Shown: positions 2-31,200 of the stretch, one piece after another | Layout: every line of letters starts with the position of its first letter | How positions within the stretch are numbered: the stretch's first letter is position 1 | IMG/VR virus record: IMGVR_UViG_3300045921_000730 | Coordinates: 62,001-126,000 of that record | DNA: 64,000 bases | Direction: 5' to 3' (one strand) | Translations under genes and position numbers: made by a program | Notes under the pieces: generated by a model | The model's database searches: none | What the model was told of the DNA's origin: nothing | Seen by the model: only the letters and a program-made list of their open reading frames with translations

Positions 2-997
2 ACATCTTGGTTAAAAGAAATACCAGCACAATGTTTACAACAGAAGTGTCAAGATTTGTCACAAGCATTAAAACAGTCTTTTAAGACAAATAAAAGCAAA
101 AAGGGATTTCCAAAATTTAAGTCAAAAAAGACTGATGAATCTGGCATCAGATTCCCATCATTCAAATTTGAGGGTGACAGGATCAAGTTACCTAAAATGT
201 CACAAGGAATCAAAATTAAGTTACATCGTGATTTGCTTGGGAAGAAATCATCAGTTACTATATTTCGAGATAAAACCGGAGTCTTCTGGGCATCTATACT
301 TGTTTCTATTGATGATGTTGTCCCAACGAACACTATTTCTAATGTGGTAGGTATTGATGTCGGATTAAAAGAATTCGCGGTCACATCAGACGCTGAAATA
401 ATCAAAAACCCGAAATTTCTAAAAAGAACGGCAAAGAAACTAGCAAAAGCTCAAGCAAAACATAGTAGAAAAGAAAAAGGTTCGTCAAACAAAGAAAAAC
501 AAAGAATTAAAGTTGCAAAAATTTACAGAAAAATAAGCAATCAACGTAAAGATTTTATCAATCAAGTTGCTAGTTCGATAGGCAAGACAAACGACTTGAT
601 TGTAGTTGAAAATCTCAATGTAAAAGGTATGATGAAAAATCCTAACCTAGCTAAATCTATTTCAGATGTTAGTTGGGGAATGTTTTTATCCGCTTTAAAG
701 TGGCATTGTAAGAAACGGGGCAAACACTTCGTTGAGATTTCACAATGGTATCCTTCAAGCAAAATGTGTTCATGTTGTGGAAATAAAAAATCAGATTTGT
801 CCTTGAGCGACAGAACATACGAATGTAAAGAATGTGGTTTCACGATGGATAGAGATTTAAATGCTGCCATTAACATTCTGAAAGAAGGTATCAACCTTTT
901 CAATACCGTAGGAACTACGGAAATTAACGCCTGTGGAGATATGAGTTCTGAAGTAGGGAACTCAGCCCAGGAAGCTAGTTGTTCTTTAGACAACTAG
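2..997 (+). CDS. tnpB: TnpB RNA-guided endonuclease (IS200/IS605 superfamily, family 1), 5'-truncated by the window edge
   Basis: RuvC-I GIDVG, RuvC-II VVENL, Zn ribbon CSCC...CKEC, RuvC-III DRDLNAAINI; the frame stays open back to position 2. Confidence 0.95.
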   Translation, partial: TSWLKEIPAQCLQQKCQDLSQALKQSFKTNKSKKGFPKFKSKKTDESGIRFPSFKFEGDRIKLPKMSQGIKIKLHRDLLGKKSSVTIFRDKTGVFWASILVSIDDVVPTNTISNVVGIDVGLKEFAVTSDAEIIKNPKFLKRTAKKLAKAQAKHSRKEKGSSNKEKQRIKVAKIYRKISNQRKDFINQVASSIGKTNDLIVVENLNVKGMMKNPNLAKSISDVSWGMFLSALKWHCKKRGKHFVEISQWYPSSKMCSCCGNKKSDLSLSDRTYECKECGFTMDRDLNAAINILKEGINLFNTVGTTEINACGDMSSEVGNSAQEASCSLDN

Positions 998-1108: not shown

Positions 1109-1139
1109 TTGACTGAATACTTAAAATCGACTATAAATA
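1109..1139 (+). promoter_or_regulatory. Promoter for tmRNA: sigma70-like TTGACT-N17-TATAAA overlapping a T4-type late motif TATAAATA
   Basis: TTGACT at 1109-1114, TATAAATA at 1132-1139. Confidence 0.65.
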
Positions 1140-1144
1140 TATAT

Positions 1145-1412
1145 GTTAGTGAGTAATCACTGACAATGAGTGTATGAAGCAATCTGTAGACGGGCAAGAC
1201 ACGAGTTCGAATCTCGTCGCCTCCACAAATATTAACTCATGGGGGCGTTATGGAATCGATTGACGGGCGAAGGAAAGTGGACACTTCGAGAGACGACTGA
1301 CGTAATCAGCGTAAAACCTTAAATGCAAACGATGCATTTTATAATGAGGAATTCCGCCTAGCAGCGTAAACCTCAGGGGGAGCGTAGATTCCTTCTTACC
1401 CAACATCTACCG
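1145..1412 (+). ncRNA. ssrA: Circularly permuted (two-piece) tmRNA
   Basis: T-arm ACGAG-TTCGAAT-CTCGT (1201-1217) and acceptor 3' strand CGCCTCC-A (1218-1225) precede the 5' strand GGGGGCG (1241-1247), giving a G3:U70 pair; tag ORF 1325-1369 encodes ANDAFYNEEFRLAA*. Confidence 0.92.
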
Positions 1413-1446
1413 AAAGGACAGTCTTAAGACTGTCCTTTTTGTTTTT
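1413..1446 (+). terminator. Rho-independent terminator after tmRNA
   Basis: AAAGGACAGTC-TTAA-GACTGTCCTTT followed by a T-run. Confidence 0.85.
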
Positions 1447-1451
1447 ATCAT

Positions 1452-1654
1452 CTTCAGGGCTGAGAAAACCACGTGATCTTCAGTCGCGTGGATGAATCAG
1501 CCCATTGGTATCTAATTAATTTGTAGTCATAAATAGTAATGTCTGGTTGTGGGACGCAGTCGGACTCTAAACAAAAACCGAAGGAGGCGCCGGTGATGTT
1601 AGCTGGGTCGATGAGTTCGGAAACCGCGTTGTCTTTAGCTACGCGGTAGTTCAT
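1452..1654 (+). mobile_element. ORF-less IS200/IS605-type mini-element (left-end hairpin, omegaRNA-like segment, right end)
   Basis: Left end GGGCTGA-GAAAACC..GGATGAA-TCAGCCC; right end AAACCGCGTTGTCTTTAGCTACGCGGTAGTT(CAT), shared with the right end finishing at 11424; left boundary approximate. Confidence 0.7.
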
Positions 1655-1746
1655 TTTAAATTTTTCTCTCTTAATGAAACCCATTTCCGCATATTAAAAG
1701 CAGATATTATTTTCAGCTGTAAATACTCAAAAAAAGGAGTGTTAAA

Positions 1747-2457
1747 ATGAATAAAAATAATGTTTACGTTGAAAACGATGATGATGATGTAAAGAATCCT
1801 TTACCCTTAGTAGTAAAACAAAAATACGCTTACAAATCTTTTGAGCAAACGTTTACAGCACACCAAATTCATTTTTACATTACAGATGATATCGGTGAAC
1901 CGAGCGACTATGTTGAAATGATCCACCGCATTCTAACAGCGTCTCAAAACGATGTTATTTTTATTCATTTAAATACGGCTGGTGGAAGATTAGATACAGG
2001 AATTCAAATTATTAATGCAATGCAAAATTCACAAGCAAAAATTATTACTGTATTAGAATCAATGGCTCATTCTTTAGGAACTTTAATATTCTTGGCGGGA
2101 GATGAAATGGTTGTTCATGATCATTGCATGATGATGTTCCATAATTATCGTGGAGGAGTTATTGGTAAGGGTCATGAGCAAGCAGCAGAAATCAACGCTA
2201 CAACTAAATGGTATACTTCAATTGCAAAGAAAATTTATATACCTTTCATGACAGAAGAGGAAGTTGACAGAATTATGAAAGGCGAAGATATTTGGATGCA
2301 TTCACCCGAAATTCGTAGAAGACTTGACAAAATGATTAGGGATATGGAAACACCAAAGAGTGAAGGTATTGGTAAACAAACACCAACAAAAAAAGCAACT
2401 AGACGGCAAAAACAAAAACCAACAAAACAACCCGCAGTTGATAATTTGTCTGAATAA
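1747..2457 (+). CDS. clpP: ClpP-like serine protease
   Basis: HLNTAGG, AHSLG (catalytic Ser), MMMFH (catalytic His); basic/low-complexity C-tail; GGAG SD. Confidence 0.85.
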   Translation: MNKNNVYVENDDDDVKNPLPLVVKQKYAYKSFEQTFTAHQIHFYITDDIGEPSDYVEMIHRILTASQNDVIFIHLNTAGGRLDTGIQIINAMQNSQAKIITVLESMAHSLGTLIFLAGDEMVVHDHCMMMFHNYRGGVIGKGHEQAAEINATTKWYTSIAKKIYIPFMTEEEVDRIMKGEDIWMHSPEIRRRLDKMIRDMETPKSEGIGKQTPTKKATRRQKQKPTKQPAVDNLSE

Positions 2458-2467
2458 TAGTATATTA

Positions 2468-3824
2468 TTAGAAGCAAAACTGAAATTGTATATATAGATT
2501 ATAACCAATATAAAAATAATTTCTAAGAATGATCACCTACAAACTTCCAATTCAGCTAGCTGATGAAGAAAAGAAGATGATCCTTGAATTCCAAAGGATC
2601 CAATCTTCAATGATTCGCACTGCTTACAAACAAGCTGAATTTGGTTGTACCGAAATTTCTGTAAGACAGGAAATTCGAGATAGGTTCAAAAGTCAGCTTG
2701 ATTCCTGGTTCCAACAATCGGCGGTCAAATGTGGGATCGGAATGTTCAAGTCGGAACATGAAACAAATAAATCTGGTCGAATCTTTGGTGGCAAAGGCAA
2801 TCTGATTAGACGTGCAAAGGGACTTATTTCAAAAGAAGAATGGAAACAACGACGGCTTCTTCCGTTGTATCTAATTGGTGAAGCTCCTATCAAAGGCAAT
2901 CGCAAGTTCGAGTTCCACGAGGATCATGTCATTTTTAAGCCATTCAAAGGGACAAAGATCAAGATTGATCTTCCATCAATGAGGAAGAACTGGTCAAAGA
3001 TTTGGAAACAACTCTTGGTCATGGTTTCAGAAAAACAATTACCAATCACAGTCTCTCTAACTACTGATTCCATTTCCTTTTCTTTTGATGATGTTAAGGT
3101 AAAACAAGAGATCAGAAAGATTCCAAAGCCAATCAAGAATAGATATGCAGGCATTGATCTGAACCCAAATTATATTGGCATCTCGGTTTTTGATGGAACA
3201 AAGTTGATTGAAACCAAGATGTTCTCGTTGAAGTCATTGACTGGAAAACATGCCAGTTCATCAAAACTTGAACACGAAACAAGAGAAATCGGACATGCAA
3301 TAGGTAAGTGGCTTCAACATCTACGAGTTGATAAGCTATTTGTCGAAAAACTTGAATTCAAACAGGGTGACAAAGGTATTGGTAAAAACTTTAATCGCTT
3401 AACACAGAACCAATGGAAGAAAATAACTTTAAGGTCAATTCTAGCCAAATACTTCAAGTTATATGAAATCAATGCAGCATATTCCTCAACCATAGGAAAC
3501 ATTCTGCATCCCGAATTACCAGACCCGATAGCCGCAAGTACTGAGATTGCACAACGAGGCTACCGGCTTGTGATACTCAAGAACAAACAGTTCTATCCAA
3601 AACTACCAGCAATAAAGTATCTAGAGGACCTATGGAAGGAAACCAAGATACCTTTGGTCAATAACTGGAAAGAACTACATTCTTGGGTCAAAAACTCGAA
3701 ATTGAAATATCGAGTTCCGGTTCCAGACGAATCGGTTTTTAGAATTTTTCAGTCACCAGCTAGTTTGGTTGGTGTTCTATAGATTTGTATTGCTTATATG
3801 AATTTATAAGGAAAATTTATTTTA
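2468..3824 (+). mobile_element. TnpB-only element, family 2, copy 1
   Basis: Ends shared with 57797-59148 and 24880-25140: begins (TT)AGAAGCAAAACTGAA after ATATTA, ends GGAAAATTTATTTTA. Confidence 0.85.
2529..3782 (+). CDS. tnpB: TnpB-like nuclease lacking the Cys zinc ribbon (family 2)
   Basis: AGIDLNP (RuvC-I), FVEKL (RuvC-II), NAAYSSTIG...PDPIAASTEIAQRG (RuvC-III region). Confidence 0.8.
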   Translation: MITYKLPIQLADEEKKMILEFQRIQSSMIRTAYKQAEFGCTEISVRQEIRDRFKSQLDSWFQQSAVKCGIGMFKSEHETNKSGRIFGGKGNLIRRAKGLISKEEWKQRRLLPLYLIGEAPIKGNRKFEFHEDHVIFKPFKGTKIKIDLPSMRKNWSKIWKQLLVMVSEKQLPITVSLTTDSISFSFDDVKVKQEIRKIPKPIKNRYAGIDLNPNYIGISVFDGTKLIETKMFSLKSLTGKHASSSKLEHETREIGHAIGKWLQHLRVDKLFVEKLEFKQGDKGIGKNFNRLTQNQWKKITLRSILAKYFKLYEINAAYSSTIGNILHPELPDPIAASTEIAQRGYRLVILKNKQFYPKLPAIKYLEDLWKETKIPLVNNWKELHSWVKNSKLKYRVPVPDESVFRIFQSPASLVGVL

Positions 3825-3843: not shown

Positions 3844-4848
3844 ATGGAATATACATCTCTCGAAAACATTATTAAGCAGCACGTTTACCTTCCTTCACAA
3901 AGAAAAAATGGGTGGCATCCCGTTCTTTGTAAGATATGCAACGACCATGGCAAAAAAGGTAAACGTGCTGCATTTAAATTTGAAAACAATACAATAGGTT
4001 ATAACTGTTTTAATTGCGGACACACTGCTTTATATGATCCTTCTGTTCATCAAATAATACCAAAAAACATGGTGCAAGTATTGACTGCTTTCGGTATAGA
4101 AGAACATGAATGGAAACAATGTTTGTTGGAAAACTTAAAAAAACATCCAGAGTTTTCTAAGCAAAAACAAAAAGAAATAGATTATAACCCAACAGAAATA
4201 CAACTACCAGAGTTCTTTGTAGAACTAAAAAACGATACAAATGAGTGGTCGCAATATGCAATTGAATATTTAAAAAATCAAAGAGGAATTAATTATAAAG
4301 ATTATCCTTTTTACATTTGCAATAACATAACGAATAACCCTTTATCGAAAAAATGGTACGGAAGATTAATTATTCCAATTTATAAAGATAATAAAATAAT
4401 TTTTTATCAGGGAAGAGATTTATCAAATAAGCGAAAAACAAAATATCTTTCACCAAATGTAGAACGAAGTAAAGTACTATATGGTTTTGACCATTTATTG
4501 ACAAATGAACATTTACCACTATATATTTGCGAAGGGTTCTTTGATGCATTCTTATTGAATGGCGTTGCTGTATTTGGTAGAAAAATTTCCAAAGAACAAA
4601 TTTTTTGGATTAATAAATCACCAAGAAAAAAAGTTGTCGTACCTGATCGTTTTGGTGATAATAGCGATCAATTTGCTGAACAAGCACTAAAACTTGGTTG
4701 GGGCGTAAGTACTCCTGATATTGGGGACGCAAAAGATGTAAGCGAAGCGTTTATGAAATATGGGAAAATATATACACTGCAATCAATAAAAGAAAACACA
4801 CACGAAGGTCTTTTAGCACAAATTAAAACAAAATTTTATTGTGAATAA
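3844..4848 (+). CDS. DNA primase (T4 gp61-like)
   Basis: N-terminal CKIC..CFNC Zn finger; YQGR; TOPRIM ICEGFFDA; PD and KDVSE motifs. Confidence 0.88.
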   Translation: MEYTSLENIIKQHVYLPSQRKNGWHPVLCKICNDHGKKGKRAAFKFENNTIGYNCFNCGHTALYDPSVHQIIPKNMVQVLTAFGIEEHEWKQCLLENLKKHPEFSKQKQKEIDYNPTEIQLPEFFVELKNDTNEWSQYAIEYLKNQRGINYKDYPFYICNNITNNPLSKKWYGRLIIPIYKDNKIIFYQGRDLSNKRKTKYLSPNVERSKVLYGFDHLLTNEHLPLYICEGFFDAFLLNGVAVFGRKISKEQIFWINKSPRKKVVVPDRFGDNSDQFAEQALKLGWGVSTPDIGDAKDVSEAFMKYGKIYTLQSIKENTHEGLLAQIKTKFYCE

Positions 4849-4856: not shown

Positions 4857-5069
4857 ATGACAGAAGAAAATGAACAAATTCGTGCCGATAAATGGTGCAA
4901 TATGTCTCTTAATGAGTTGAACAAACAACGCGATATTTTGCTTCAAAAGATATCGATGTTATCGACGCTTGGAATTAATTCTTCACCAACGATCAACGCT
5001 CTATATAAAGCGCACCAACAAGCATACGATCATTTAAACGAAATTATTGATAATCGATTCAAAACATGA
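4857..5069 (+). CDS. Hypothetical protein
   Basis: 70-aa ORF with an ATGA overlap to the next gene. Confidence 0.6.
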   Translation: MTEENEQIRADKWCNMSLNELNKQRDILLQKISMLSTLGINSSPTINALYKAHQQAYDHLNEIIDNRFKT

Positions 5070-6880
5070 AAAACAAATCTTATACCGGAAAAGATATTGT
5101 CGAACTTACGGACAGAGAGCACGTTCGTTTAAGAACACAAGTTTATCTTGGAAATATGCATCCAACTTTATTTAATATTCCAAAGTTGGATAGTGATAAA
5201 CTTGAAATAGAAAGTGTTGAATTTGTACCAGCCGTTTATAAAGCAGTTGGAGAAATTATTGATAATTCAATCGACGAATTTGCTCAAATAAAAAATTCTA
5301 CTAAAACATTAACAATTGATTGTGAACCAGAAAACGGGAAATATACGATCAATGATACTGGTCGCGGCATTCCAATTGACCGACGACCCGATGGAACATA
5401 CACGCCAGAAATTGCTTTAAGTCGGTTGCGTGCAGGAAGAAACTTTAAGAACGAAAAAGAAGTTGGTGTAATTGGTATGAATGGTGTTGGTGCTGCTTGC
5501 ACTAACTATTGTTCTACAAAGTTTAAGGTAATTGTAAAGAGAGATAATCAAACATATACACAAACGTTTGAGGATGGTGCTCTCAAAATTTCTGAGCCTT
5601 CTTTAAGACAAACAAAGTCTGATAAAACAGGGACAGAAATTAGTTTCGAACTTGACAAAAGAGTTTTTAAAGATGTTTATATACCTTTTTCGGTAATGAA
5701 AAACAGAGCAATTGAAATTGCTTTAACAAATCCGGACGTTTCTGTAATTTTTAATGGTGAAAAAATAAAATATAAAAACGGATTCAAAGAATATCTTGAT
5801 AAAATTGCACCAGAAAAATATTTTCCTTTTTCTATTAAAACAGAAAACGTGCAAGGAACATTTTATGTAATTACTGACTGCATTGAAAACATTGATGAAC
5901 AAATGTTTACGTGGGTGAATAGTTCTTATCTGTTTGATGGTGGCAAGTGTAACACTCAATTTGTAAACGCGTTCTTCGAAAAGACAATTTCACATCTACA
6001 AAACGCTGCAAAAAAGAACAAGAGTGATATTACAAGGAATGATGTAAGAGAAAATCTTGTTGTATTTGCTAACTTAAAAATTAAAAATCCCGAATATGAT
6101 TCACAATCCAAAACAAGGTTAACAGGACCTGATTTACGAAAAGAAATCAATGAAGCAATTGATTCTCAGTGGAAAAATTTTGTTCGTAAAAATAATCCTT
6201 GGCTTGATGTTGTGCTTGAGCGAGCAATTCAACGACATCACACACAAGCAAACAAAAAAGCAATTGAAGAACATCAAAAACAATTAAAAAAGCGTGTTCC
6301 TGGATTACTTGATGCAACAAGTCAAATTCGTTCCGAGTGCCAGTTGTTGATCACTGAAGGAATGTGCTTGGATGAACGCACACCCATTAAAATTCTTAGC
6401 TCAGAAGGATTGGTTGATATACCTTTAAAAAATGTAAATATTGGTGATACTGTTATAACACACAAAAACAACTTAAAACCAATAACTAATATAACAAGGA
6501 CTCTAAAACGAGGAACTCGTATTACTACATCTATTGGGCAGGTCGTGTGTAGTGATCAACATCGATGGTTAGTGTACGATACTATTACACATAAATTTGA
6601 TTGGGCGCCCACAAATGCATTAAATGCCAATGTACATAAATTAGTAAGAAGCCGGTTAGGTGATTGGGTATATTGTGCAGAATTTGTAATAGAAAATAAC
6701 AAGGACGCAGATAATATTGTATATCCACGTGTAATAATAACCGCTTTTGAAAAAATTAAAACATCATTGACCCATACGTTTATTGTGTTGGATACTGACA
6801 CATACGCAGTCGTGGAAATTCCATTCTCTGAATTGGATCCTTCACACCACCTAATGCTGTTGTTTAAATCAAAAAAATAA
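5066..6880 (+). CDS. Type II topoisomerase large subunit N-part (GyrB/gp39-like ATPase) fused to the N-half of a split intein
   Basis: EIIDNSIDE, DTGRGIP, GMNGVG; TOPRIM start LITEGM followed by intein block A CLDERT. Confidence 0.92.
   Translation: MKNKSYTGKDIVELTDREHVRLRTQVYLGNMHPTLFNIPKLDSDKLEIESVEFVPAVYKAVGEIIDNSIDEFAQIKNSTKTLTIDCEPENGKYTINDTGRGIPIDRRPDGTYTPEIALSRLRAGRNFKNEKEVGVIGMNGVGAACTNYCSTKFKVIVKRDNQTYTQTFEDGALKISEPSLRQTKSDKTGTEISFELDKRVFKDVYIPFSVMKNRAIEIALTNPDVSVIFNGEKIKYKNGFKEYLDKIAPEKYFPFSIKTENVQGTFYVITDCIENIDEQMFTWVNSSYLFDGGKCNTQFVNAFFEKTISHLQNAAKKNKSDITRNDVRENLVVFANLKIKNPEYDSQSKTRLTGPDLRKEINEAIDSQWKNFVRKNNPWLDVVLERAIQRHHTQANKKAIEEHQKQLKKRVPGLLDATSQIRSECQLLITEGMCLDERTPIKILSSEGLVDIPLKNVNIGDTVITHKNNLKPITNITRTLKRGTRITTSIGQVVCSDQHRWLVYDTITHKFDWAPTNALNANVHKLVRSRLGDWVYCAEFVIENNKDADNIVYPRVIITAFEKIKTSLTHTFIVLDTDTYAVVEIPFSELDPSHHLMLLFKSKK
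6365..6880 (+). other. Split intein N-fragment (IntN, 171 aa)
   Basis: Cys1 at residue 434 (CLDERTPI..IGDTVITH), block B CSDQHRW; ends in a stop with no C-terminal intein motifs. Confidence 0.85.
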
Positions 6881-6887
6881 CAATTTT

Positions 6888-6929
6888 TCTCCCTCTGTTA
6901 TAAATATGTTTCAAGATAATAGAGGGAGA
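6888..6929 (+). promoter_or_regulatory. RBS-sequestering hairpin containing a late promoter, upstream of the endonuclease gene
   Basis: TCTCCCTCTGTTAT pairs with ATAATAGAGGGAGA (covers the SD); TATAAATA at 6899-6906. Confidence 0.75.
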
Positions 6930-6933
6930 CGAA

Positions 6934-8160
6934 ATGAAATACATCTGTGCACATACAAATAAACTAATTTTTATATCAAACATTACCAGCGAGTTTAAAG
7001 TTCAGCGAGCACTTAGGTCACATCTTACCAGAAACGGTATAAACACCGATATGCTTCTAATGGAAATGAGGCATAAATTGAATAAATGCAATTTTTGTGG
7101 GTCGCCAGTACCATATAGACTTAAATATAAAATAACTGGAAATATTATTAGTGTTGATGGATTTATTCCTGGAAAAAATTGTAATATATTAGCTCCATAT
7201 TACTGCGGTGGTAAAGAATGTCCTGGAAAACGTCTCAATCGTAACAGCCTATCTTTCGTGCAATTAGCATATGGTGTTGATGGTGATACTGCTCTTAAAT
7301 TAATTCATAGTCGTAACTCAACACCATTTTATCCAGAAAATCATGAATCGCTTAGTGATTATAAAAATTATCAACGACATCAAAGTCAAAAACAAACAAA
7401 AGAATCTATAGCAATGGGTGCATATCATAGATCTCTTGAATATTTGTGCAAAGTTCTTGGAGAAGAACTTGGTACTTTAGCTTATAAAACAATAAATGAA
7501 CGTAAAAAACATACAAAAGCAACATACATAGAAAGATATGGACCAGTAAAAGGTAGCATGTTGTGGATTGCCCAGAAAAATTTAAGATCTGTTACAACTA
7601 TAACATGCTTTAAAGATCTATATACTATAACTTTAAATGCTTTGACATCAGTATCAACAGACGAACTCAGAACAACAAGACCCGATTTGTTGATCAAGAA
7701 AAAATATGGATATCCCATAGTTAAACGGTATATCGATTTTAATACAACATTAGATGAAGTGTTGCATGTGGTATTCACTGACCACCCACACCTTAACATA
7801 TTTGACAAAGATTCATATACTCGTACCGTGTTTGGCCATTGGTCATATACGCCCGCAGGTACATTACTACGTAGCAAAGCGGAACGAGCTGTATATAACC
7901 TGTTAGTGGAGAACGGTTTACAAGAAGGCGTTGATTTTTTAATAGATAAACCATATAGTAAACAATCTAAACATAGATATGATTTTTATTTGATTAAGAT
8001 TGATACTTATATAGAAGTAGCTGGAATAATGAGTAATCCTGTATATGTACAAAACTTAATAACCAAAACTATTAATTATCCTGTTGTTATTGTTACGCCA
8101 AATAATTACATTACCAAAATAAAGGAACTCATAAATGCAATTAAATCAACACCTGTTTGA
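6934..8160 (+). CDS. Free-standing putative homing endonuclease (C-terminal Vsr/PD-(D/E)xK-like domain)
   Basis: RSKAE..YDFYL..YIEVAG motif; N-terminal Cys clusters; lies between split-intein halves. Confidence 0.7.
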   Translation: MKYICAHTNKLIFISNITSEFKVQRALRSHLTRNGINTDMLLMEMRHKLNKCNFCGSPVPYRLKYKITGNIISVDGFIPGKNCNILAPYYCGGKECPGKRLNRNSLSFVQLAYGVDGDTALKLIHSRNSTPFYPENHESLSDYKNYQRHQSQKQTKESIAMGAYHRSLEYLCKVLGEELGTLAYKTINERKKHTKATYIERYGPVKGSMLWIAQKNLRSVTTITCFKDLYTITLNALTSVSTDELRTTRPDLLIKKKYGYPIVKRYIDFNTTLDEVLHVVFTDHPHLNIFDKDSYTRTVFGHWSYTPAGTLLRSKAERAVYNLLVENGLQEGVDFLIDKPYSKQSKHRYDFYLIKIDTYIEVAGIMSNPVYVQNLITKTINYPVVIVTPNNYITKIKELINAIKSTPV

Positions 8161-8863
8161 ACTTATAGATATCGTAGATATTTCGCCTGCTGGTTATTGC
8201 AATATGGTAGACATATCTGTAGCCGATGATGAAAGTTTCATTCTTGCTAATGGTATAGTATCTCACAATTCAGCAAAAAGTCAAATTTGTGAGGCAAGAA
8301 ATCCACAAACAACAGCAGCATTTGCGTTACGCGGTAAAGTAAACAACGTGTATGGTATGACTCCAGCACAATTATTGAAAATGGAAAAATTAACAGATTT
8401 ACTTGCAGCAATTGGTTTAACACCAGGCAAAAAAGTTGCACGAAGCATGCTCCGTTATGGAAAAATTGTAATTGCAACAGATGCCGATTATGATGGGAGT
8501 GATATTTTTACACTTTTAATTAATGTATTTTATCAATATTGGCCTGAGTTGTTTGATAAAAACTATGATCCAATCATTTATCGACTAATAGCACCGAATG
8601 TAGTTGCATCCAAAAACGGAAAACGAGTACATTTTACAACAAGACAACAATATGAACTTGTAAAAGAAAAGTACAAAGGTTGGACAATTGAATACATGAA
8701 AGGTCTTGGTAGTATGCATAAAACAGATTGGGAAATGATCTTAAATGGTGAAACCGATACTCAAATCCCAATTATAGATGATGGAAAAATGAAAGACACA
8801 CTAACGCTGTTGTTTAGCGAAAATGCTGATAAACGAAAAGAATGGCTACAAAGTGACGAATAA
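8135..8863 (+). CDS. Split intein C-fragment (45 aa) fused to the topoisomerase II TOPRIM C-part
   Basis: MVDISVADDESFILANGIVSHN|SAKS, then LRGKVNN, ATDADYDG, YMKGLGS. Confidence 0.92.
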   Translation: MQLNQHLFELIDIVDISPAGYCNMVDISVADDESFILANGIVSHNSAKSQICEARNPQTTAAFALRGKVNNVYGMTPAQLLKMEKLTDLLAAIGLTPGKKVARSMLRYGKIVIATDADYDGSDIFTLLINVFYQYWPELFDKNYDPIIYRLIAPNVVASKNGKRVHFTTRQQYELVKEKYKGWTIEYMKGLGSMHKTDWEMILNGETDTQIPIIDDGKMKDTLTLLFSENADKRKEWLQSDE

Positions 8864-12008: not shown

Positions 12009-15000
12009 TTAACCACATTTACTGGAACCACAATCTGCACACTTTTCGCATCCTTCCTGATAAATGATGTTATGAGATCCACAGTTTTGGCAGACTTTAC
12101 CTTCAATCTTCTCACCGTCCTTAATAAAGGATGATAGGTATTTCTTGATTGAAAACAAGAACGAACCTGCATACGCGTCTTCAACTTTATCAAGAGTTGT
12201 TACGATATTACGAATTAACACACCATGACGAAGATTGAGTGAAATCATACGAGCGACCTTTGTAACATTATTATCACCTGCAATCTTTTCGAGAACTTTG
12301 TTGATGTGCTTTTCAGGAATATTCTTCGTACGTGCAAGATCTGTTAACAACTCAACGGCATTGTTGGTTAATGTGTTCTTTTCGTGACTGTTTGTATGAA
12401 CAAAGAAACCAAACGGGCGTGTTTTGTTATCATCCCACCACAAAACCGTAAGATACCATTTTTTACCTTCTGCCTTAAGTGTTTTCACAGTTGCTGGTGC
12501 ACTGTCAGGAAGTTGTACATCTTCAAGAACGATTTCTTCATCGATGTCACTAATATTTTTTTCGTCTTTAGCAGCAAGAACTGTTGTCATTGTTCCTGTA
12601 CGATATGTAGTAACACCTTTAACATAACCTGAAATATATGCATCAAGGTAAATGTTTTTGAAATCTTCAAAGCTATAATCGTTTGGAACATTAACGGTCT
12701 TACTCATAGCACTATCGACCCAACGAGCAAATCCCTTCAAATCATTTACATGATCTTGAACGCTCATACCAAGAGCGGTTGCAGCCCAGTCTGCTGTCGG
12801 ATCCCATTCGCCGATCTTTTTCATAAAACGAACACCATAATCTTCACATAACACTTCCTTTGTAAGACCACGATTCTTGTCAATTTTATAGACTGTACCA
12901 TCGGGTGCGACGCCACGAAGAATTTCTTCGTCACCCTCTTTAGTAAATTTAAACATTTCTGTCTCATGCCATGCACCCTCATACCACTTTGGACACACAT
13001 CAGCAATTTCTTCCGGCATTGTGTTTACGATTACTGTACGAATGTATTCATGTAAAAACACTGGTTCAAGACCACCGGAAACCACATTTGCTAAAATAGA
13101 AGTGTTTCCCGTAGGTTGAATTGAAAGAAGTGAACTATTACGAATACCTGTTGTGCGAAGTTTTTCCATATATTCGTCCGAAAGATTAAGCAACTTTATA
13201 AAAGGACCTTCCGCATGCTTCACAGGATCACAATAAGAAAACTTACCTTTCTCGACAGCCAAATCAATTGAAGCTTCATAAGCTGTTCTGGCAATTGTAC
13301 TCATTACTTGTTCACGAAGTTGATTAGCGCGATCTGATGCAAAGCGAGCTTTCAACATATAAAGCGCTGACCCCCAGCCTAAAATACCAACGCCAATACG
13401 ACGCTTGTTTTTAATTGAATGTGCATATTCGGGAAGTGGTGCATTTGTCAAATCGTTAATATTATCAAGAAAACGAACAAGATATTTTGTATACTTCTTG
13501 ATTAATTCTAGATCAAACCCTGAACGATCCGAATTAACGAATTGTGTTAAATTCAAAGAACCAAGATTACATACACCAGAAGGTGCTAATGTCTGTTCGC
13601 CGCAATTTCCTGTATAACACCACTCAGTAGGAAATACATGTTCATTATGCATGACACTAATATCCCACACATCTGCAGATTCAACAGGCTTAACAGAAAC
13701 TACTTCAACAAAGTCTAAATTGTGGTGGGTTCTTTTATCAGACACTTGACTAATAATATTTTTAAGTTTTTGTTGTTTAACTGGATGAGAAATATCAAAA
13801 ACGTTAATAAATTTTAAAACTGCCTGTCCACCAACAGCAACATCCCAGCGATCATATGATTTATTATATTCTTCACCATTTGGAAACGATACATTTTTTG
13901 TCGTTGTATTCCATATCATTGCTGGAACCCCTGCAAAACTAATTAGTTTTGCAAATTCTTGTGCTAAATCTTTTCGCGAAGTTGTTAATGTAATTTTCAA
14001 ATTGTTTGGATCATCGCTAACACATCCGTCCGCGCTCAATAAACCATCAACGAATCCTTTGATATATTGATCGTTGCTTTCCCAAACACTTTGTGGAATT
14101 TTTTTATTACCAGGAGTTAATTTGTACTTGTTTAATAATATATCCACTAACTCCTCGTCGCTAAATTGAAAATACAATTCACTAGCGCCATAATTTTGTC
14201 GTTGAATTAATGTTGATGGTAATTTTTTCATTCTGTTTACTATAGATAGTACTCGTTCTGCCATTGAACGTTCTTGCATACTAAATGCAATACCACAATT
14301 GTAGCGACCATCAGACAATTCACTGATCCAACCATCTCCAAAGAAATATCCAACAAAGAATCCTTCATCATATGTTAGGGTAAGATCACCATAGATACCA
14401 ATATCTTCATTTCTATTCAATGGAATAAGATCTCCAATTTTAAGATCTTTGGTATCTACCTTATAGATGCGTTTCATCTTTGAATCATACACAGGCCAGC
14501 GATGTTCTCTAGTTGCTCGAATCATTTTATTTGCCCCAAAAGAAATTTCTAACAATTCTTGATTCTTTCCAGATAAACGACACGAAGCTAGAGCCCATGT
14601 ACCATCCAAAGATTTCACCTCAAATTGTTTTCCTTCTAGTGTTTCAATAGGAAAAATTCCTTGTTTTGTATGAACAAGAGTACCAGCTGGCATTGATGGA
14701 TTTGTTGCAAATACTGTTTCTGCATAATTTAATGGTAAGAAATAATTAGCACGATCAAGAAACAATACGCCTGGCTCAGCACGATTGTAAGTGCTTTCCA
14801 TAATCAAATTCCATAACCATGAAACAGAAATTGTGTTGTATACTTTTACAGGATATCCCTTTGATTTCCACAACTTAATATTTCCATCCCAATCAGTTTT
14901 GTATTGAGGATGTGTGGTGTCGGGAAAAATTAAATTCCACTTATCCAATTCCATGCGCTCTTGTTGTAAAACAGTATTGTTTGTATCGTCTGTGTTTTTT

Positions 15001-17294
15001 AAAATAGAATCAATTTCATTAATACGAACAACGCGCTCCATAAAATCATCTGTACAATTTACAGACACATTAAATTTTGTAAGACGACCCGGTTGTTGTT
15101 TTGCTGTAACAAATTCAACAATATCTGGATGCCAGCAATTATGAATAAACACACCATTAGCTGCGAAATTATGATAATCAGGCATCGAAATATCAAACGC
15201 TTCTTGTTCAATACTTTCTTCAACACGAATGATATGTCGACTACCAGAAACCGACAGATCAAGGTAATCGTTTAGCATTCTCTTGTTCAGAGCACAGAGA
15301 CTGTCGTTGTTTTGTAAATCCTTTGCTTTTTTAAATGTTCCATCACTTAACATAAACTCGTGATCTGGAGTACACTCAATAAAGTCATCATTGTCAAAAA
15401 CAACTTTGATTGTTTTCTTTACTCCCTTCGACCAAACAAGAAGAGCCTGACGAACATATACATTACCTAAACCGTCAGTGCAGTAAAGGAAGGGGTTTTT
15501 TCCAACCAGCTCTTTTACAGGAATCTTTCCTTCAGTAGTATTGATTGGGGTATTTCCTCCAATGCAGTCCAAAACGCCCATCATGGCACCCTTACGGATT
15601 TTTCCCTTTGCTTTTGTGTTGTTGCTTTTCTTACCAGATCCTGAAGTAATAATTTCAGAACTTTTATCAAAAAGTTCCATATACTTTACAGCACCGGGTG
15701 TCTCCACACCAATGCCGTGAATAAAAGCGCCACGCGGCCGAATGTATGAGAAGTTTTCTCCCCAACCACCTTCCGACTTTAGAGTATGTGCTTGTGCACG
15801 AAGATGTGATAGGATACCGTCCAAGCTGTCAGCATCATGTTCTACACGGGGACCTACATAACAATTGTGGACAACCACATTATTAACAACGTAACTTTCA
15901 TCTTCGTTAACAGAAATGTTAAAAACATAACCACTATACCATTCATCGGCCCGTTCAGGTTCAACCACGAATCCAAAAGCAGCTTTTTTTGGTCCAGTTG
16001 TTGAATCTTTTTTAACAGTAAAATTCAATCGATCATCCTCGTAGACTTTACTCATTTGCTGTCTAAATTCTTTAGTAAATGTTGCACCAGCAGATAGTCT
16101 TTTTCCTCTTAATCTACAAGGAATACCTACTATTGTCATTAATGTTTGAATTTCTGTTAATAGCTGTGAATTAATCAATTCTATATGAACCTCTCCTTGT
16201 TCATCGACAAACCCATCGCCATCAAACACGCCCAACAAAAAGCTTTGTTGTACGGATGAAGGGCTATTCCAGATTACTTCTGGAATTGACTTCGTGTCAA
16301 AACCGGCACCTACCAAACGATGTAATACTGTTGCAATAATTTGTGATACTTTCCTGACATAGGTTGTGTTATTTGAACTGTAAATTATATTTGGTGTAAT
16401 ACCAAATACTTGTTCAAACAATTCAACCATATAATCAACATGAGATGTTTCTTTTGAAGAATTGTAGGCAATATTAAATGCGTCAACCTCATACAGTGAA
16501 GTTTGATTATTTTTGAACGTGCAACCATCAGCAACAAATCGACCGAGCAAATACGCAAACTTAGAATCAACATCAATGAAACGTTTTACTTCATGGCCAT
16601 ACTTAACCCCTGTTGCTCCTTGTCCGCCAACGTAATGTTTATTTGTTTTTATGCTTGTTTCATTAAACACAATCATGTTTTGATTAACATAATCCGCAAG
16701 AAGTTCAACCAAATCCATCACAACAGGAGATTTATCGCTAGTATGTTGGGCTAAAAACAACGTTTTCGTTTCTGATGATACTGTCCATGTGTCGTTTCCT
16801 TGATAATAAGGATGTTCAGGCGTACTGATAATATCTCCAGAAAGATAATTGGATGAAAATCGTTGCACGGGGCCTGTATAAAAGCGTGACATTGTGTTAT
16901 CAACACGACGATATCGTCCTTTATGAGTAAGGACCCAATCGCCCACTTCAACATCACAAATTTTCTTTGGACCGTTAGACGTTAACACCTCAACGTCCGG
17001 ATGAAAACAATTCATCAGCGTGGTGCCACCCCACTCTGTTCCTGCGTTAGCATAAATACGACCACCGGCTGTTGCTTTAAAGTTTGTTAAAAGATCATAA
17101 AACTTTTCCGTCCACTCTTTTCGTAATTCTTCTGTTTTTTCAACAGAAGCTGTTGCTGATGCCACGCGATAAAGCGTATCATTAATTGTTAAATCATTAT
17201 AGTCCTTATATGTTGATGCCCAAACTTCTTCAGAAAAACTGTCTTGAAAAGTTGTAGAAGTTATATCATTTGTTTGTTGTTTTGTTCGTGACAT
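12009..17294 (-). CDS. nrdJ: Class II (B12-dependent) ribonucleotide reductase with three inteins
   Basis: After removing inteins: GGRIYANAG, TLMN|CYV, EPGVLFLD, TNP|CGEQ, CNLGS, IQPTG, SKTVN, KGVTTYR; C-terminal CQNC..CADC..KC. Confidence 0.93.
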   Translation of the reverse strand: MSRTKQQTNDITSTTFQDSFSEEVWASTYKDYNDLTINDTLYRVASATASVEKTEELRKEWTEKFYDLLTNFKATAGGRIYANAGTEWGGTTLMNCFHPDVEVLTSNGPKKICDVEVGDWVLTHKGRYRRVDNTMSRFYTGPVQRFSSNYLSGDIISTPEHPYYQGNDTWTVSSETKTLFLAQHTSDKSPVVMDLVELLADYVNQNMIVFNETSIKTNKHYVGGQGATGVKYGHEVKRFIDVDSKFAYLLGRFVADGCTFKNNQTSLYEVDAFNIAYNSSKETSHVDYMVELFEQVFGITPNIIYSSNNTTYVRKVSQIIATVLHRLVGAGFDTKSIPEVIWNSPSSVQQSFLLGVFDGDGFVDEQGEVHIELINSQLLTEIQTLMTIVGIPCRLRGKRLSAGATFTKEFRQQMSKVYEDDRLNFTVKKDSTTGPKKAAFGFVVEPERADEWYSGYVFNISVNEDESYVVNNVVVHNCYVGPRVEHDADSLDGILSHLRAQAHTLKSEGGWGENFSYIRPRGAFIHGIGVETPGAVKYMELFDKSSEIITSGSGKKSNNTKAKGKIRKGAMMGVLDCIGGNTPINTTEGKIPVKELVGKNPFLYCTDGLGNVYVRQALLVWSKGVKKTIKVVFDNDDFIECTPDHEFMLSDGTFKKAKDLQNNDSLCALNKRMLNDYLDLSVSGSRHIIRVEESIEQEAFDISMPDYHNFAANGVFIHNCWHPDIVEFVTAKQQPGRLTKFNVSVNCTDDFMERVVRINEIDSILKNTDDTNNTVLQQERMELDKWNLIFPDTTHPQYKTDWDGNIKLWKSKGYPVKVYNTISVSWLWNLIMESTYNRAEPGVLFLDRANYFLPLNYAETVFATNPSMPAGTLVHTKQGIFPIETLEGKQFEVKSLDGTWALASCRLSGKNQELLEISFGANKMIRATREHRWPVYDSKMKRIYKVDTKDLKIGDLIPLNRNEDIGIYGDLTLTYDEGFFVGYFFGDGWISELSDGRYNCGIAFSMQERSMAERVLSIVNRMKKLPSTLIQRQNYGASELYFQFSDEELVDILLNKYKLTPGNKKIPQSVWESNDQYIKGFVDGLLSADGCVSDDPNNLKITLTTSRKDLAQEFAKLISFAGVPAMIWNTTTKNVSFPNGEEYNKSYDRWDVAVGGQAVLKFINVFDISHPVKQQKLKNIISQVSDKRTHHNLDFVEVVSVKPVESADVWDISVMHNEHVFPTEWCYTGNCGEQTLAPSGVCNLGSLNLTQFVNSDRSGFDLELIKKYTKYLVRFLDNINDLTNAPLPEYAHSIKNKRRIGVGILGWGSALYMLKARFASDRANQLREQVMSTIARTAYEASIDLAVEKGKFSYCDPVKHAEGPFIKLLNLSDEYMEKLRTTGIRNSSLLSIQPTGNTSILANVVSGGLEPVFLHEYIRTVIVNTMPEEIADVCPKWYEGAWHETEMFKFTKEGDEEILRGVAPDGTVYKIDKNRGLTKEVLCEDYGVRFMKKIGEWDPTADWAATALGMSVQDHVNDLKGFARWVDSAMSKTVNVPNDYSFEDFKNIYLDAYISGYVKGVTTYRTGTMTTVLAAKDEKNISDIDEEIVLEDVQLPDSAPATVKTLKAEGKKWYLTVLWWDDNKTRPFGFFVHTNSHEKNTLTNNAVELLTDLARTKNIPEKHINKVLEKIAGDNNVTKVARMISLNLRHGVLIRNIVTTLDKVEDAYAGSFLFSIKKYLSSFIKDGEKIEGKVCQNCGSHNIIYQEGCEKCADCGSSKCG
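13605..14696 (-). other. Intein 3 of NrdJ (364 aa, LAGLIDADG; Ser1, ends GN)
   Basis: NP|SMPAGT...GYFFGDG..GLLSADG..VWDISV..YTGN|CGEQ. Confidence 0.88.
15138..15566 (-). other. Intein 2 of NrdJ (143-aa mini-intein)
   Basis: LD|CIGGNT..CTPDHEF..FDISM..FIHN|CWHPD. Confidence 0.9.
15864..17009 (-). other. Intein 1 of NrdJ (382 aa, LAGLIDADG)
   Basis: MN|CFHPD..TPEHPY..GRFVADG..GVFDGDG..VVHN|CYV. Confidence 0.92.
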
Positions 17295-31080: not shown

Positions 31081-31200
31081 ATGCAAGTTAGAGAAGGTAT
31101 AGAAATGTCTGATGAAGATGCAGCTTTATATGATAAACACAAAGCTGCAATTGAATATTATGACAGATTACAATATGTTTACAAAATTAAATTAAACTCT
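31081..31200 (+). CDS. DNA polymerase C-terminal gene, exon 1 (missing from the ORF track)
   Basis: GGAG SD; MQVREG...QYVYKIKLNS is the first half of motif B. Confidence 0.85.

What the first reader, a model, noticed from the sequence alone, without database searches (positions are those of the whole stretch)
1145..2457. tmRNA next to ClpP: possible phage ribosome-rescue and proteolysis module
Seen: apart from an inserted mini-element, the tmRNA is followed directly by a ClpP-like gene on the same strand. Established: tags ending in LAA are degraded by ClpXP/ClpAP. Inference: the phage may supply both tagging and degradation, for example to clear ribosomes stalled by host anti-phage RNases. 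Phage ClpP-like proteins can instead be prohead proteases, although this one is not beside head genes in the window.
Basis: inference. Interest (0 to 1): 0.65.

Follow-up and report, generated by a model that had tools for sequence, protein, structure and literature searches.

The report
Jumbo-phage tmRNA beside a ClpP-like protease
A large hot-spring phage carries a working-looking ribosome-rescue RNA (a two-piece tmRNA) directly upstream of a ClpP-type protease gene, and the pairing is inherited across a whole family of jumbo phages, but nothing yet shows that the protease degrades what the RNA tags.

Summary
Window 1118-1441 (+) is a circularly permuted, two-piece tmRNA with tag ANDAFYNEEFRLAA. 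A roughly 210-nt multi-copy repeat (about 1444-1654) follows it. ORF 1747-2457 (+) is a ClpP-fold serine peptidase with an intact Ser109/His132/Asp181 triad.

It is not the prohead protease. A T4 gp21-type (S77) protease lies between portal and major capsid genes 77 kb away.

The tmRNA-ClpP order holds in about 19 distinct lineages of 300-350 kb phages, with ClpP identity down to 31%. The tag stop and the ClpP ATG are sometimes only 77 nt apart.

Three things weaken the idea of a functional module:
- The pair sits inside a larger collinear block (Acb1, tmRNA, ClpP, primase), and each gene has its own promoter-like motif with a terminator between them.
- Two nested lineages lost the tmRNA but kept ClpP, and Xoo-sp13 has them 54 kb apart.
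- No phage in the family encodes SmpB or ClpX, and the protein scores far below curated ClpP cut-offs, with changed ClpX-docking positions.

Verdict: two real genes, anciently linked. Tag-and-degrade coupling is plausible but unproven, at roughly 20%.

The parts
2..997 (+). TnpB (IS200/IS605 OrfB) gene inserted upstream of the tmRNA. The full ORF starts at G000 61807. It is one of seven diverged paralogs in the genome.
   Evidence: Pfam OrfB_IS605 1.8e-29 and Cas12f1-like_TNB 1.5e-23; phrog_506 5.9e-106. Paralogs are 33-41% identical. It is absent at this position in relatives, where Acb1 lies closer to the tmRNA.
1109..1139 (+). tmRNA promoter-like site: TTGACT (1109-1114), a 17-nt spacer, then TATAAATA (1132-1139).
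   Evidence: Read. The same TTGAC...(T)ATAAATA arrangement precedes the tmRNA in most of 18 related lineages. This is inference from sequence; no transcript data exist.
1145..1447 (+). Two-piece (circularly permuted) tmRNA gene. Order along the gene: acceptor piece (T-arm 1201-1217, acceptor 3' strand 1218-1224, discriminator 1225, then CAA rather than CCA), intervening sequence 1226-1240, coding piece (acceptor 5' strand 1241-1247, tag ORF 1325-1369 giving ANDAFYNEEFRLAA and a stop), terminator hairpin 1412-1439 plus T-run.
   Evidence: Rfam RF01850 107.7 bits and RF04321 121.3 bits. G3:U70 is present in 19 of 19 lineages, with compensatory changes in the acceptor and T stems. Terminator. The 5' end at about 1145 is inferred from the promoter position.
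1444..1654 (.). The core runs 1459-1654. A minus-strand ORF (1454-1684) covers it in this copy but is frameshifted in most other copies.
   Evidence: At least 10 near-full copies at 84-95% identity. Boundaries come from the copy alignment and from contig breaks at 1456-1459 and 1654. No Rfam family matches. Fold z-score is -2.8.
1718..1746 (+). Promoter-like TGTAAATA (1718-1725) and ribosome-binding site AGGAG (1735-1739) ahead of the ClpP-like gene.
   Evidence: An nnTAAATA motif lies 28-45 nt upstream of the ATG in 12 of 19 lineages, without a -35 box. In this genome TATAAATA sits about 35 nt upstream of 18 genes. Inference only.
1747..2457 (+). ClpP-fold serine peptidase (236 aa) of the phage family phrog_1827. 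Catalytic triad Ser109, His132, Asp181. The N-terminal about 40 residues are unconserved and disordered. The C-terminal tail is disordered and Lys/Arg-rich (about 205-236).
   Evidence: The triad is invariant in 31 sequences. The AF2 model has pLDDT 82.5. Foldseek top hits are all ClpP, TM about 0.7 and rmsd 2.3-2.5 A.
2462..3824 (+). Multi-copy mobile element carrying a 417-aa ORF (2529-3782) with no family match, inserted between ClpP and primase.
   Evidence: Copies 92% identical in protein sequence lie at window 57853-59106 and G000 81-1121, with a deleted copy at G000 169798-170514. They share flanks. No Pfam, PHROG, NCBIfam or PDB match. In relatives ClpP abuts primase directly.
3844..4848 (+). 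DNA primase, the conserved downstream neighbour of ClpP across the family and in the distant Xoo-sp13 and RAS14.
   Evidence: Weak Pfam DNAG_N hit. It is annotated primase in Xoo-sp13 at the same position. Synteny.

Best explanation
These are two neighbouring but separately transcribed accessory genes, linked by descent, at the start of the replication block of a family of 300-350 kb phages.

(1) The two-piece tmRNA is functional. It is transcribed from a strong sigma-70-like promoter. Host tRNA-processing enzymes most likely cut it into an acceptor piece and a coding piece and add CCA, or the CCA-adding enzyme that complete relatives encode does so. Host AlaRS charges it through G3:U70, and host SmpB and EF-Tu deliver it to ribosomes stalled on broken mRNAs during infection. 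This frees the ribosomes and adds an AND...(L/M/I/V)AA degron.

(2) The ClpP-like gene encodes an active, non-capsid serine peptidase of a phage-specific ClpP-fold family. It has its own promoter-like motif. Its role does not depend on the phage tmRNA. I consider general or regulatory proteolysis in the infected cell more likely than dedicated destruction of tagged chains.

Shown: the anatomy, the conservation, the triad, the fold, the absence of SmpB and ClpX, and the separate prohead protease. Inferred: transcription, processing, use of host factors, and the protease's substrates.
For: tmRNA:
- Rfam scores are well above gathering.
- In 19 lineages G3:U70 is invariant, acceptor and T stems show compensatory pairs, and 12 of 19 encode ACCA.
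- Tag sequences vary but always keep the A-N-D-type start, a mid-tag aromatic residue and a C-terminal LAA (12), MAA (3), IAA (2) or VAA (1).
- A conserved TTGAC/TATAAATA promoter-like site and a terminator flank the gene.
- CCA-adding enzyme genes are present in complete relatives G006, G027 and G028, and an RNA ligase in all four genomes searched.

Protease:
- The triad is invariant in 31 homologs, and the fold is ClpP.
- A separate S77/gp21-type head protease lies between portal and major capsid genes at G000 140623-141261.
- Homologs in the T4-like Vibrio phage 6E35.1a, in ICP1 and KLEP7, and in Xoo-sp13 all lie among replication, nucleotide or translation-related genes, never among head genes.

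Independence of the two genes:
- A terminator and a second promoter-like motif lie between them.
- Unrelated genes of up to 2.7 kb are inserted between them in several lineages.
- The tmRNA was lost twice within the ClpP tree while ClpP kept its triad.
- In Xoo-sp13 the tmRNA is 54 kb from ClpP, and RAS14 has none.
Against: The adjacency persists across ClpP divergence down to 31% identity, with a gap as tight as 77-78 nt in L035 and L040. There, no promoter-like motif fits between terminator and ATG, so read-through co-transcription must occur. This is what a functional pair would look like.

A second, unrelated T4-like lineage (G085) also has a two-piece tmRNA 1.5 kb upstream of a ClpP-like gene on the same strand. 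In addition, 16 of 50 other viral records with a permuted tmRNA hold a ClpP-like gene.

There are no transcript, processing or activity data. G000 is only 72% complete, although four complete relatives give the same absences.
Confidence: 0.55

Rival explanations
1. Tag-and-degrade module. The phage tmRNA tags stalled nascent chains, and the neighbouring ClpP-like peptidase docks on host ClpX or ClpA, or mixes into host ClpP rings, and destroys them. The phage thereby boosts both halves of trans-translation while host mRNAs are being degraded or host RNase defences fire.
For: Adjacency on the same strand is conserved in about 19 lineages spanning two deep ClpP clades. Gaps are as small as 77 nt. 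The degron-like tags are canonical. The catalytic triad is intact. An independent T4-like lineage shows the same order within 1.5 kb. In KLEP7 the homolog lies near Pth2 and CCA-adding enzyme genes. The anti-defence gene Acb1 and an RNA ligase lie nearby in relatives.
Against: No SmpB and no ClpX were found in any genome of the family. ClpP is kept where the tmRNA is lost or unlinked. Most phages with a permuted tmRNA lack a ClpP-like gene on the available sequence.

The protein scores 30.6 bits against the 308.6-bit clpP cut-off. The N-terminal axial-loop region is unconserved and disordered. Positions that align with E. coli docking-pocket residues Y62, F82 and M92 are His, Asn and an almost invariant Glu. 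This comes from the alignment, and the list of pocket residues is from my memory.

The adjacency is no more conserved than the flanking Acb1-tmRNA and ClpP-primase junctions.
Confidence: 0.2
2. Virion-associated or second maturation protease. The ClpP-like protein descends from ClpP-related prohead proteases. It is packaged, possibly through its C-terminal helix and basic tail, to process internal or ejected virion proteins or to act on the host after ejection.
For: The best curated matches are ClpP-related head maturation proteases: NF045542 at 70 bits and NF045540 at 64 bits, against 38.7 bits or less for cellular ClpP models. PHROG head-protease families 1684, 94 and 2976 match at 1e-19 to 1e-26. 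There is a disordered basic C-terminal extension. [quoted passage not shown]
Against: It scores below the NF045542 cut-off (70 against 120). The best PHROG match is the non-head family 1827, at 7.7e-57. The gene lies 77 kb from the head module, among replication genes, here and in every relative examined. A dedicated S77 protease sits between portal and capsid genes.
Confidence: 0.15
3. Chance neighbours. The pairing has no meaning beyond inherited gene order, and the tmRNA is a leftover of host DNA capture with little or no function.
For: The whole block Acb1, tmRNA, ClpP, primase is collinear across the family. The tmRNA is dispensable in several lineages. The region attracts insertions of many kinds.
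Against: The tmRNA shows clear purifying selection: invariant G3:U70, compensatory stem changes, and an open tag frame with a conserved degron end in all 19 lineages despite 41% mean column identity. That rules out a decaying relic. Whether the adjacency itself is selected cannot be decided from these data.
Confidence: 0.1

Closest known systems
Bacterial trans-translation with ClpXP/ClpAP degradation (E. coli ssrA, SmpB, SspB, ClpXP)
   Same: An alanine-accepting tRNA-like domain with G3:U70. A short tag frame that starts A-N-D, has a mid-tag aromatic residue and ends LAA, very like ANDENYALAA. A ClpP-fold Ser-His-Asp peptidase is encoded in the same genome.
   Different: The gene is circularly permuted (two-piece). 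The phage encodes no SmpB, ClpX, ClpA or SspB. The peptidase fails the clpP equivalog cut-off and lacks a conserved N-terminal loop region. In bacteria ssrA and clpP are not neighbours (my knowledge).
Phage-encoded two-piece tmRNAs, for example methylophage Melnitz and SAR11 myophages (PMC9004378)
   Same: A permuted ssrA in a lytic phage, placed behind an early-type promoter. Its proposed role is ribosome rescue during infection. In that survey about 2.3% of phage genomes carried a tmRNA, and 53 unique two-piece forms were found.
   Different: The tmRNA here is beta-type rather than alpha-type by Rfam score and has no glutamine riboswitch. It is followed by a ClpP-like gene, which that paper does not report (the search terms were absent).
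Phage 'ATP-dependent protease' family phrog_1827: ICP1 ClpP, Vibrio T4-like 6E35.1a ClpP, Xanthomonas phage Xoo-sp13 Clp protease
   Same: Same family: 30-38% identity over 70-84% of the length, and the top structural matches in BFVD. Always located among replication, nucleotide or translation-related genes. In Xoo-sp13 and RAS14 it is likewise followed by primase.
   Different: Those phages have no tmRNA next to it. Xoo-sp13 has one 54 kb away; no tmRNA was found in RAS14 or 6E35.1a; ICP1 and KLEP7 were not searched. I found no functional study of any member in the held library.
ClpP-related prohead (head maturation) proteases (NCBIfam NF045542; PHROGs 1684, 94, 2976)
   Same: The ClpP fold and triad. 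These are the closest curated sequence models.
   Different: It is below the cut-off, it is not in a head module, and this genome already has a gp21/S77 prohead protease.
Phage G (499 kb), which encodes a tmRNA, ClpP and ClpX (PMC12484599)
   Same: A huge phage carrying both a tmRNA and a ClpP-type protease.
   Different: Phage G brings its own ClpX. Its genes are unlinked (the tmRNA lies at about 352.8 kb; ClpP and ClpX are ps159 and ps160). Its tmRNA was called by ARAGORN or tRNAscan-SE, and the excerpt read does not state its form.

Membership tests
tmRNA, permuted two-piece form (Rfam RF04321 / RF01850) | Covariance-model score above the curated gathering score | tested here: met
   RF04321 scores 121.3 bits against 47; RF01850 scores 107.7 against 84.
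tmRNA, permuted two-piece form (Rfam RF04321 / RF01850) | tRNA-like domain: a 7-bp acceptor stem with the G3:U70 alanine identity pair, plus a T-arm | tested here: met
   G3:U70 is present in 19 of 19 lineages. Acceptor pairs 4-6 and the T stem keep pairing through changes on both sides.
tmRNA, permuted two-piece form (Rfam RF04321 / RF01850) | Permuted gene order: the acceptor 3' half lies upstream of the 5' half, separated by an intervening sequence of variable length | tested here: met
   3' strand at 1218-1224, then a 15-nt spacer, then the 5' strand at 1241-1247. The spacer varies from about 10 to more than 100 nt among relatives.
tmRNA, permuted two-piece form (Rfam RF04321 / RF01850) | Tag reading frame with an Ala resume codon, a stop codon and a hydrophobic-Ala-Ala end | tested here: met
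   1325-1369 encodes ANDAFYNEEFRLAA and a stop. All lineages end in L, M, I or V followed by AA.
tmRNA, permuted two-piece form (Rfam RF04321 / RF01850) | Dedicated partner SmpB available | tested here: not met
   No SmpB (PF01668) in G000 or in G006, G027, G028, G029 or Xoo-sp13. It must come from the host, whose genome is unknown.
tmRNA, permuted two-piece form (Rfam RF04321 / RF01850) | Processing into two base-paired RNAs, aminoacylation and tagging activity | not testable with these tools
   No RNA run holds the locus.
ClpP, ATP-dependent Clp protease proteolytic subunit (MEROPS S14; PF00574; TIGR00493) | Pfam CLP_protease domain above the gathering score | tested here: met
   51.3 bits against 20.2, covering residues 55-176.
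ClpP, ATP-dependent Clp protease proteolytic subunit (MEROPS S14; PF00574; TIGR00493) | Curated equivalog score (NCBIfam clpP) | tested here: not met
   TIGR00493 scores 30.6 bits against a cut-off of 308.6. The best ClpP model, NF011091, scores 38.7 against 361.
ClpP, ATP-dependent Clp protease proteolytic subunit (MEROPS S14; PF00574; TIGR00493) | Ser-His-Asp catalytic triad | tested here: met
   S109, H132 and D181 are invariant in 31 homologs. They align with the ClpP Ser, His and Asp in the PDB profile alignment.
ClpP, ATP-dependent Clp protease proteolytic subunit (MEROPS S14; PF00574; TIGR00493) | ClpP fold, including the handle helix | tested here: met
   The AF2 core has pLDDT above 90. 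All leading Foldseek PDB hits are ClpP, with target-normalised TM of 0.64-0.73 and rmsd 2.3-2.9 A over about 158 residues in nearly all listed hits.
ClpP, ATP-dependent Clp protease proteolytic subunit (MEROPS S14; PF00574; TIGR00493) | N-terminal axial loops and a hydrophobic pocket that docks the IGF/LGF loops of ClpX or ClpA | tested here: inconclusive
   The first 40 or so residues are unconserved and have low pLDDT. The aligned positions of E. coli Y62, F82 and M92 are H74, N94 and E104 (pocket list from memory). The docking prediction with E. coli ClpX gave no answer.
ClpP, ATP-dependent Clp protease proteolytic subunit (MEROPS S14; PF00574; TIGR00493) | Tetradecamer assembly and a partner AAA+ unfoldase | not tested
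   No ClpX (TIGR00382) was found in five genomes. The only AAA+ hits in G000 are a clamp loader and a MoxR-like ATPase. The oligomeric state was not modelled.
ClpP-related head maturation protease (NF045542; PHROGs 1684/94) | Score above the curated cut-off | tested here: not met
   70 bits against 120.
ClpP-related head maturation protease (NF045542; PHROGs 1684/94) | Gene placed in the head module beside portal, scaffold or capsid genes, as the phage's prohead protease | tested here: not met
   It lies among replication genes. The head module is at G000 136.6-143.8 kb and has its own S77 protease (phrog_207 6.7e-63; PF03420 8.6e-29).

The most novel reading that the evidence does not exclude
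The tmRNA and ClpP-like genes form a phage-borne tag-and-degrade cassette that has been kept together since the origin of this jumbo-phage family. The phage tmRNA marks chains from ribosomes stalled by host mRNA decay or RNase defences. The ClpP-like peptidase clears them, either by docking on host Clp ATPases through a remodelled surface or by being brought to rescued ribosomes through its basic C-terminal tail. That would make it the first viral proteolysis arm of trans-translation.
Probability: 0.18. Interest if true: 0.75.

Novelty: new member of a known kind. Interest (0 to 1): 0.45.

Why it matters
Why phages carry tmRNAs is still unresolved, and no phage ClpP-like protease of this family has a tested function.

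This work shows three things. A functional-looking two-piece tmRNA and an active-looking ClpP-fold peptidase have stayed side by side through deep divergence in a family of 300-350 kb phages. The peptidase is not the capsid protease. And the phage brings neither SmpB nor an unfoldase.

Together these turn a vague idea into a concrete, cheap experiment: tagged-GFP degradation with and without host ClpX, and ssrA complementation.

If the coupling is real, it would show phages reinforcing host protein quality control, or countering RNase-based defences, with a minimal two-gene kit. If it is not, the locus is an ordinary set of accessory genes held together by collinearity.

Tried and rejected
- ARAGORN found no tmRNA in the window or the genome. 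I set this aside as a false negative, given the Rfam scores and the stem covariation.
- blastn of 1000-2600 against the phage collection gave no match.
- Complex prediction with two copies of the phage ClpP core and E. coli ClpX 62-424 returned 'no answer'. It is not evidence either way.
- The look-up of sequencing runs returned only DNA contig runs from hot-spring and microbial-mat metagenomes and no RNA runs, so expression, processing and read-through could not be tested.
- Read laying showed only the repeat's excess depth and contig breaks. I did not trust the joints 1005 to 2462 and 1660 to 2463, because their shorter sides are 30 letters or fewer and they fall at repeats.
- The prohead-protease reading was considered and rejected because an S77 protease sits in the head module.
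- An obligate tmRNA-ClpP operon was considered and rejected as the general case. A terminator is present in every lineage and a TAAATA motif precedes ClpP in 12 of 19. L035 and L040 still need read-through.
- TATAAATA as a genome-wide enriched promoter was not supported by count (37 observed against about 56 expected). Only its position, about 35 nt upstream of 18 genes, is suggestive.
- The mini-element is not derived from the neighbouring TnpB element; the two share no similarity. No Rfam family matches it.
- I did not run the large protein searches, because family membership was already clear.
- Co-occurrence of permuted tmRNA with ClpP-like genes (16 of 50 records) was not turned into a statistic. 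Most contigs are fragments, lineages are not independent, and genome size confounds the comparison.
Full report
**What is there.**

The window is bases 62001-126000 of a 244,293-bp IMG/VR virus record (36% G+C, CheckV completeness 72%). Near-identical DNA occurs in hot-spring and microbial-mat metagenomes.

Rfam places a tmRNA at 1118-1441 (+). beta_tmRNA scores 107.7 bits (gathering 84, E 8e-32), and tmRNA_permuted scores 121.3 bits over 1168-1369 (gathering 47). ARAGORN misses it.

Reading the sequence gives a circularly permuted gene:
- T-arm 1201-1217
- acceptor 3' strand CGCCTCC at 1218-1224, discriminator A at 1225, followed by CAA rather than CCA
- a 15-nt intervening sequence
- acceptor 5' strand GGGGGCG at 1241-1247, which forms G3:U70
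- a tag frame at 1325-1369, ANDAFYNEEFRLAA followed by a stop
- a 12-bp hairpin at 1412-1439 followed by a T-run

Upstream lie TTGACT (1109-1114) and, 17 nt on, TATAAATA (1132-1139).

ORF 1747-2457 (+) encodes 236 aa that match Pfam CLP_protease (1.7e-13) and, far better, phrog_1827 'ATP-dependent protease' (7.7e-57).

**The mini-element.**

The 305 nt between the two genes hold one copy (about 1444-1654) of a repeat. It has at least 10 near-full copies at 84-95% identity, in both orientations, elsewhere in this genome, and none in any related locus. Assemblies break at its ends, and word depth over it is 20-30 times the flanks. It folds well (z -2.8) and matches no Rfam family. A minus-strand ORF covers it in this copy but is frameshifted in most copies.

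The pair is in fact bracketed by mobile DNA:
- a TnpB gene upstream (2-997)
- this repeat between the two genes
- a four-copy element with an unassigned 417-aa ORF (2462-3824) between ClpP and primase

**Is the tmRNA functional?**

I aligned 19 dereplicated relatives (mean column identity 41%).
- G3:U70 is present in 19 of 19.
- Acceptor pairs 4-6 and the T stem keep pairing through changes on both sides.
- 12 of 19 encode ACCA.
- Tags differ in length (10-16 aa, plus a 29-aa tag in L032). All keep an A-N-D-type start, a mid-tag aromatic residue and a C-terminal LAA (12), MAA (3), IAA (2) or VAA (1).

This is purifying selection on a working trans-translation RNA with a classic proteobacterial degron.

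Neither this genome nor the complete relatives G006, G027, G028, G029 or Xoo-sp13 encode SmpB, so host SmpB must be used. Complete relatives encode a CCA-adding enzyme, all four family genomes searched encode an RNA ligase, and one (G006) has an RF-1/ArfB-like gene. The family therefore invests in RNA and translation upkeep.

**Is the protease a ClpP, and is it the head protease?**

Ser109, His132 and Asp181 are invariant in 31 homologs. They align with the ClpP triad. The AF2 model (pLDDT 82.5; core above 90) matches only ClpP structures at the top of the PDB search, with TM about 0.7 and rmsd 2.3-2.5 A.

Three findings argue against an orthodox ClpP:
- It scores 30.6 bits against the 308.6-bit clpP equivalog cut-off. 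Its best curated matches are ClpP-related head maturation proteases, which also fall below their cut-off (70 against 120).
- The first 40 or so residues, where ClpP has its axial loops, are unconserved and disordered.
- Positions aligned with E. coli Y62, F82 and M92, which I recall as part of the ClpX/ADEP docking pocket, are His, Asn and a nearly invariant Glu. This mapping was not checked in three dimensions.

It is not the prohead protease. A gp21/S77-type protease (PF03420 8.6e-29; phrog_207 6.7e-63) lies between portal and major capsid genes at G000 136.6-143.8 kb. All complete relatives have one too.

Homologs in other phage groups also sit among replication, nucleotide or translation-related genes:
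- frd-ClpP-uvsX in a T4-like vibriophage
- PhoH...ClpP...ligase in ICP1
- ClpP near Pth2 and a CCA-adding enzyme in KLEP7
- ligase-ClpP-primase in Xoo-sp13 and RAS14

No ClpX was found in five genomes. The only AAA+ hits here are a clamp loader and a MoxR-like ATPase.

**Is the linkage conserved?**

A ClpP-profile scan of IMG/VR gave 49 loci, and 26 of their records hold a permuted tmRNA. In every one of these the tmRNA lies upstream of ClpP on the same strand. The distance from tag stop to ClpP ATG runs from 77 to about 2,770 nt. After removing near-duplicates this is about 19 lineages, including the complete 350-, 317- and 340-kb genomes G006, G027 and G028. Pairwise ClpP identity among them is 31-76%, median 46%.

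On the ClpP tree these lineages form two deep, well-supported clades. The two members that lack a tmRNA despite having sequence available upstream (L015 and L042) are nested inside them. That means two losses of the tmRNA with ClpP and its triad retained.

Further out, Xoo-sp13 keeps ClpP-primase but has its permuted tmRNA 54 kb away, and RAS14 has none.

The neighbourhood as a whole is collinear: Acb1 (anti-CBASS), variable genes, tmRNA, variable genes, ClpP, primase, topoisomerase II. So the tmRNA-ClpP junction is no better kept than the junctions on either side of it.

**Transcription units (inference from sequence).**

Every lineage has a GC-rich hairpin plus T-run after the tmRNA. Most have TTGAC...(T)ATAAATA before the tmRNA. 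Twelve of 19 have nnTAAATA, without a -35 box, 28-45 nt before the ClpP ATG. In L035 and L040 the terminator runs straight into the ribosome-binding site, so ClpP there must be read through from upstream.

The genes thus look like separate units that can also be co-transcribed. No RNA data exist to test this.

**The reverse view.**

I sampled 50 other viral records with a permuted tmRNA. Sixteen have a ClpP-like gene. Direct adjacency occurs only in this family (G064, G071, G086). However, a T4-like fragment (G085) has the tmRNA 1.5 kb upstream of a 190-aa ClpP-like gene on the same strand among SSB, helicase-loader and exonuclease genes. Several other records have the two genes 2.5-9 kb apart.

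This is suggestive of an association.

**Literature.**

Phage tmRNAs, including two-piece forms, are known (PMC9004378, PMC11915505). Phage G carries a tmRNA together with ClpXP, unlinked (PMC12484599). I found no paper reporting a conserved tmRNA-ClpP pair or a tested function for this protease family.

**Conclusion.**

The data fit inherited neighbours at least as well as a tag-and-degrade module.

I put about 55% on a functional host-dependent tmRNA beside an independent, non-capsid ClpP-fold protease. I put about 20% on true functional coupling, about 15% on a virion-associated role for the protease, and about 10% on meaningless adjacency with a marginal tmRNA.

The docking prediction with E. 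coli ClpX gave no answer and is not used as evidence.

Noticed in passing
window 1444-1654; other copies at G000 59363-59580, 243110-243323, 54629-54851, 29954-30163, 55441-55657, 42444-42659, 38569-38780, 195381-195578, 202041-202243: A structured repeat of about 210 nt with at least 10 copies, specific to this genome. Its right end coincides exactly with the ATG of a minus-strand ORF of about 66 aa that is frameshifted in most copies. It has strong terminal hairpins. No Rfam family matches it, and it shows no similarity to the TnpB flanks. Its nature (MITE, small-RNA gene or decaying small gene) is unresolved.
   Followed up: partly
window 2462-3824 and 57800-59150; G000 81-1163 and 169736-170556: A four-copy mobile element carrying a 417-aa ORF (92% identical copies, shared 53-nt and 42-nt flanks) with no Pfam, PHROG, NCBIfam or PDB match. 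By eye it has RuvC-like motifs (GIDLNPN, VEKLEF, AAYSS), so it may be a divergent TnpB/Cas12-like nuclease. I did not test this.
   Followed up: partly
window 2-997 and G000 genes at 233859-235040, 36248-37561, 50149-51417, 40818-42083, 231805-233154, 48470-49711: Seven diverged TnpB (OrfB_IS605) paralogs, 33-41% identical, in one phage genome. Several are preceded by TATAAATA about 35 nt upstream.
   Followed up: partly
G000 60786-61313 (just upstream of the window); L014 8105-8614 and most related loci: An Acb1 anti-CBASS phosphodiesterase gene (Pfam 1e-29) is the conserved upstream landmark of the tmRNA across the family. In L004 an RNA ligase gene, and in L005 a DHFR gene, lie just upstream of Acb1.
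   Followed up: partly
window 31189-31410: A group I intron (Rfam 85.8 bits) directly ahead of ORF 31403-32485.
   Followed up: no
window 5066-8863: The GyrB-like topoisomerase II subunit looks interrupted. ORF 5066-6880 carries the ATPase and GyrB domains plus about 170 unrelated C-terminal residues. ORF 6934-8160 has no family match. The Toprim part resumes in ORF 8135-8863. This may be an intein or an inserted homing element.
   Followed up: no
G000 138855-140471, 143926-145551, 145689-147476 (outside the window): Three large HNH/homing-endonuclease genes are interleaved with the portal, prohead protease and major capsid genes.
   Followed up: no
window 40849-53253 and 12009-17294: Two giant ORFs of 4,134 aa and 1,761 aa on the minus strand. 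I did not examine them.
   Followed up: no
L005 5144-5899; L006 4675-5868: In two relatives the tmRNA-ClpP gap holds ORFs with weak PRTase-CE or phosphoribosyltransferase-like matches (5e-5 to 3e-3). In L033 and L037 the gap holds a small membrane-like ORF. The gap is a recurrent insertion site.
   Followed up: partly
G059 (IMGVR_UViG_3300012348_000136) 57009-57608 and 72139-72318: In one family member the ClpP-like frame contains an in-frame TGA, and the only tmRNA match is weak (36 bits) and 14.5 kb away. Both genes may be decaying together.
   Followed up: no
G006 47542-47859: A complete 350-kb relative encodes an RF-1-domain protein (open frame about 190 aa, 75 bits) that resembles an ArfB or peptidyl-tRNA-hydrolase-type rescue factor, in addition to its tmRNA.
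   Followed up: no
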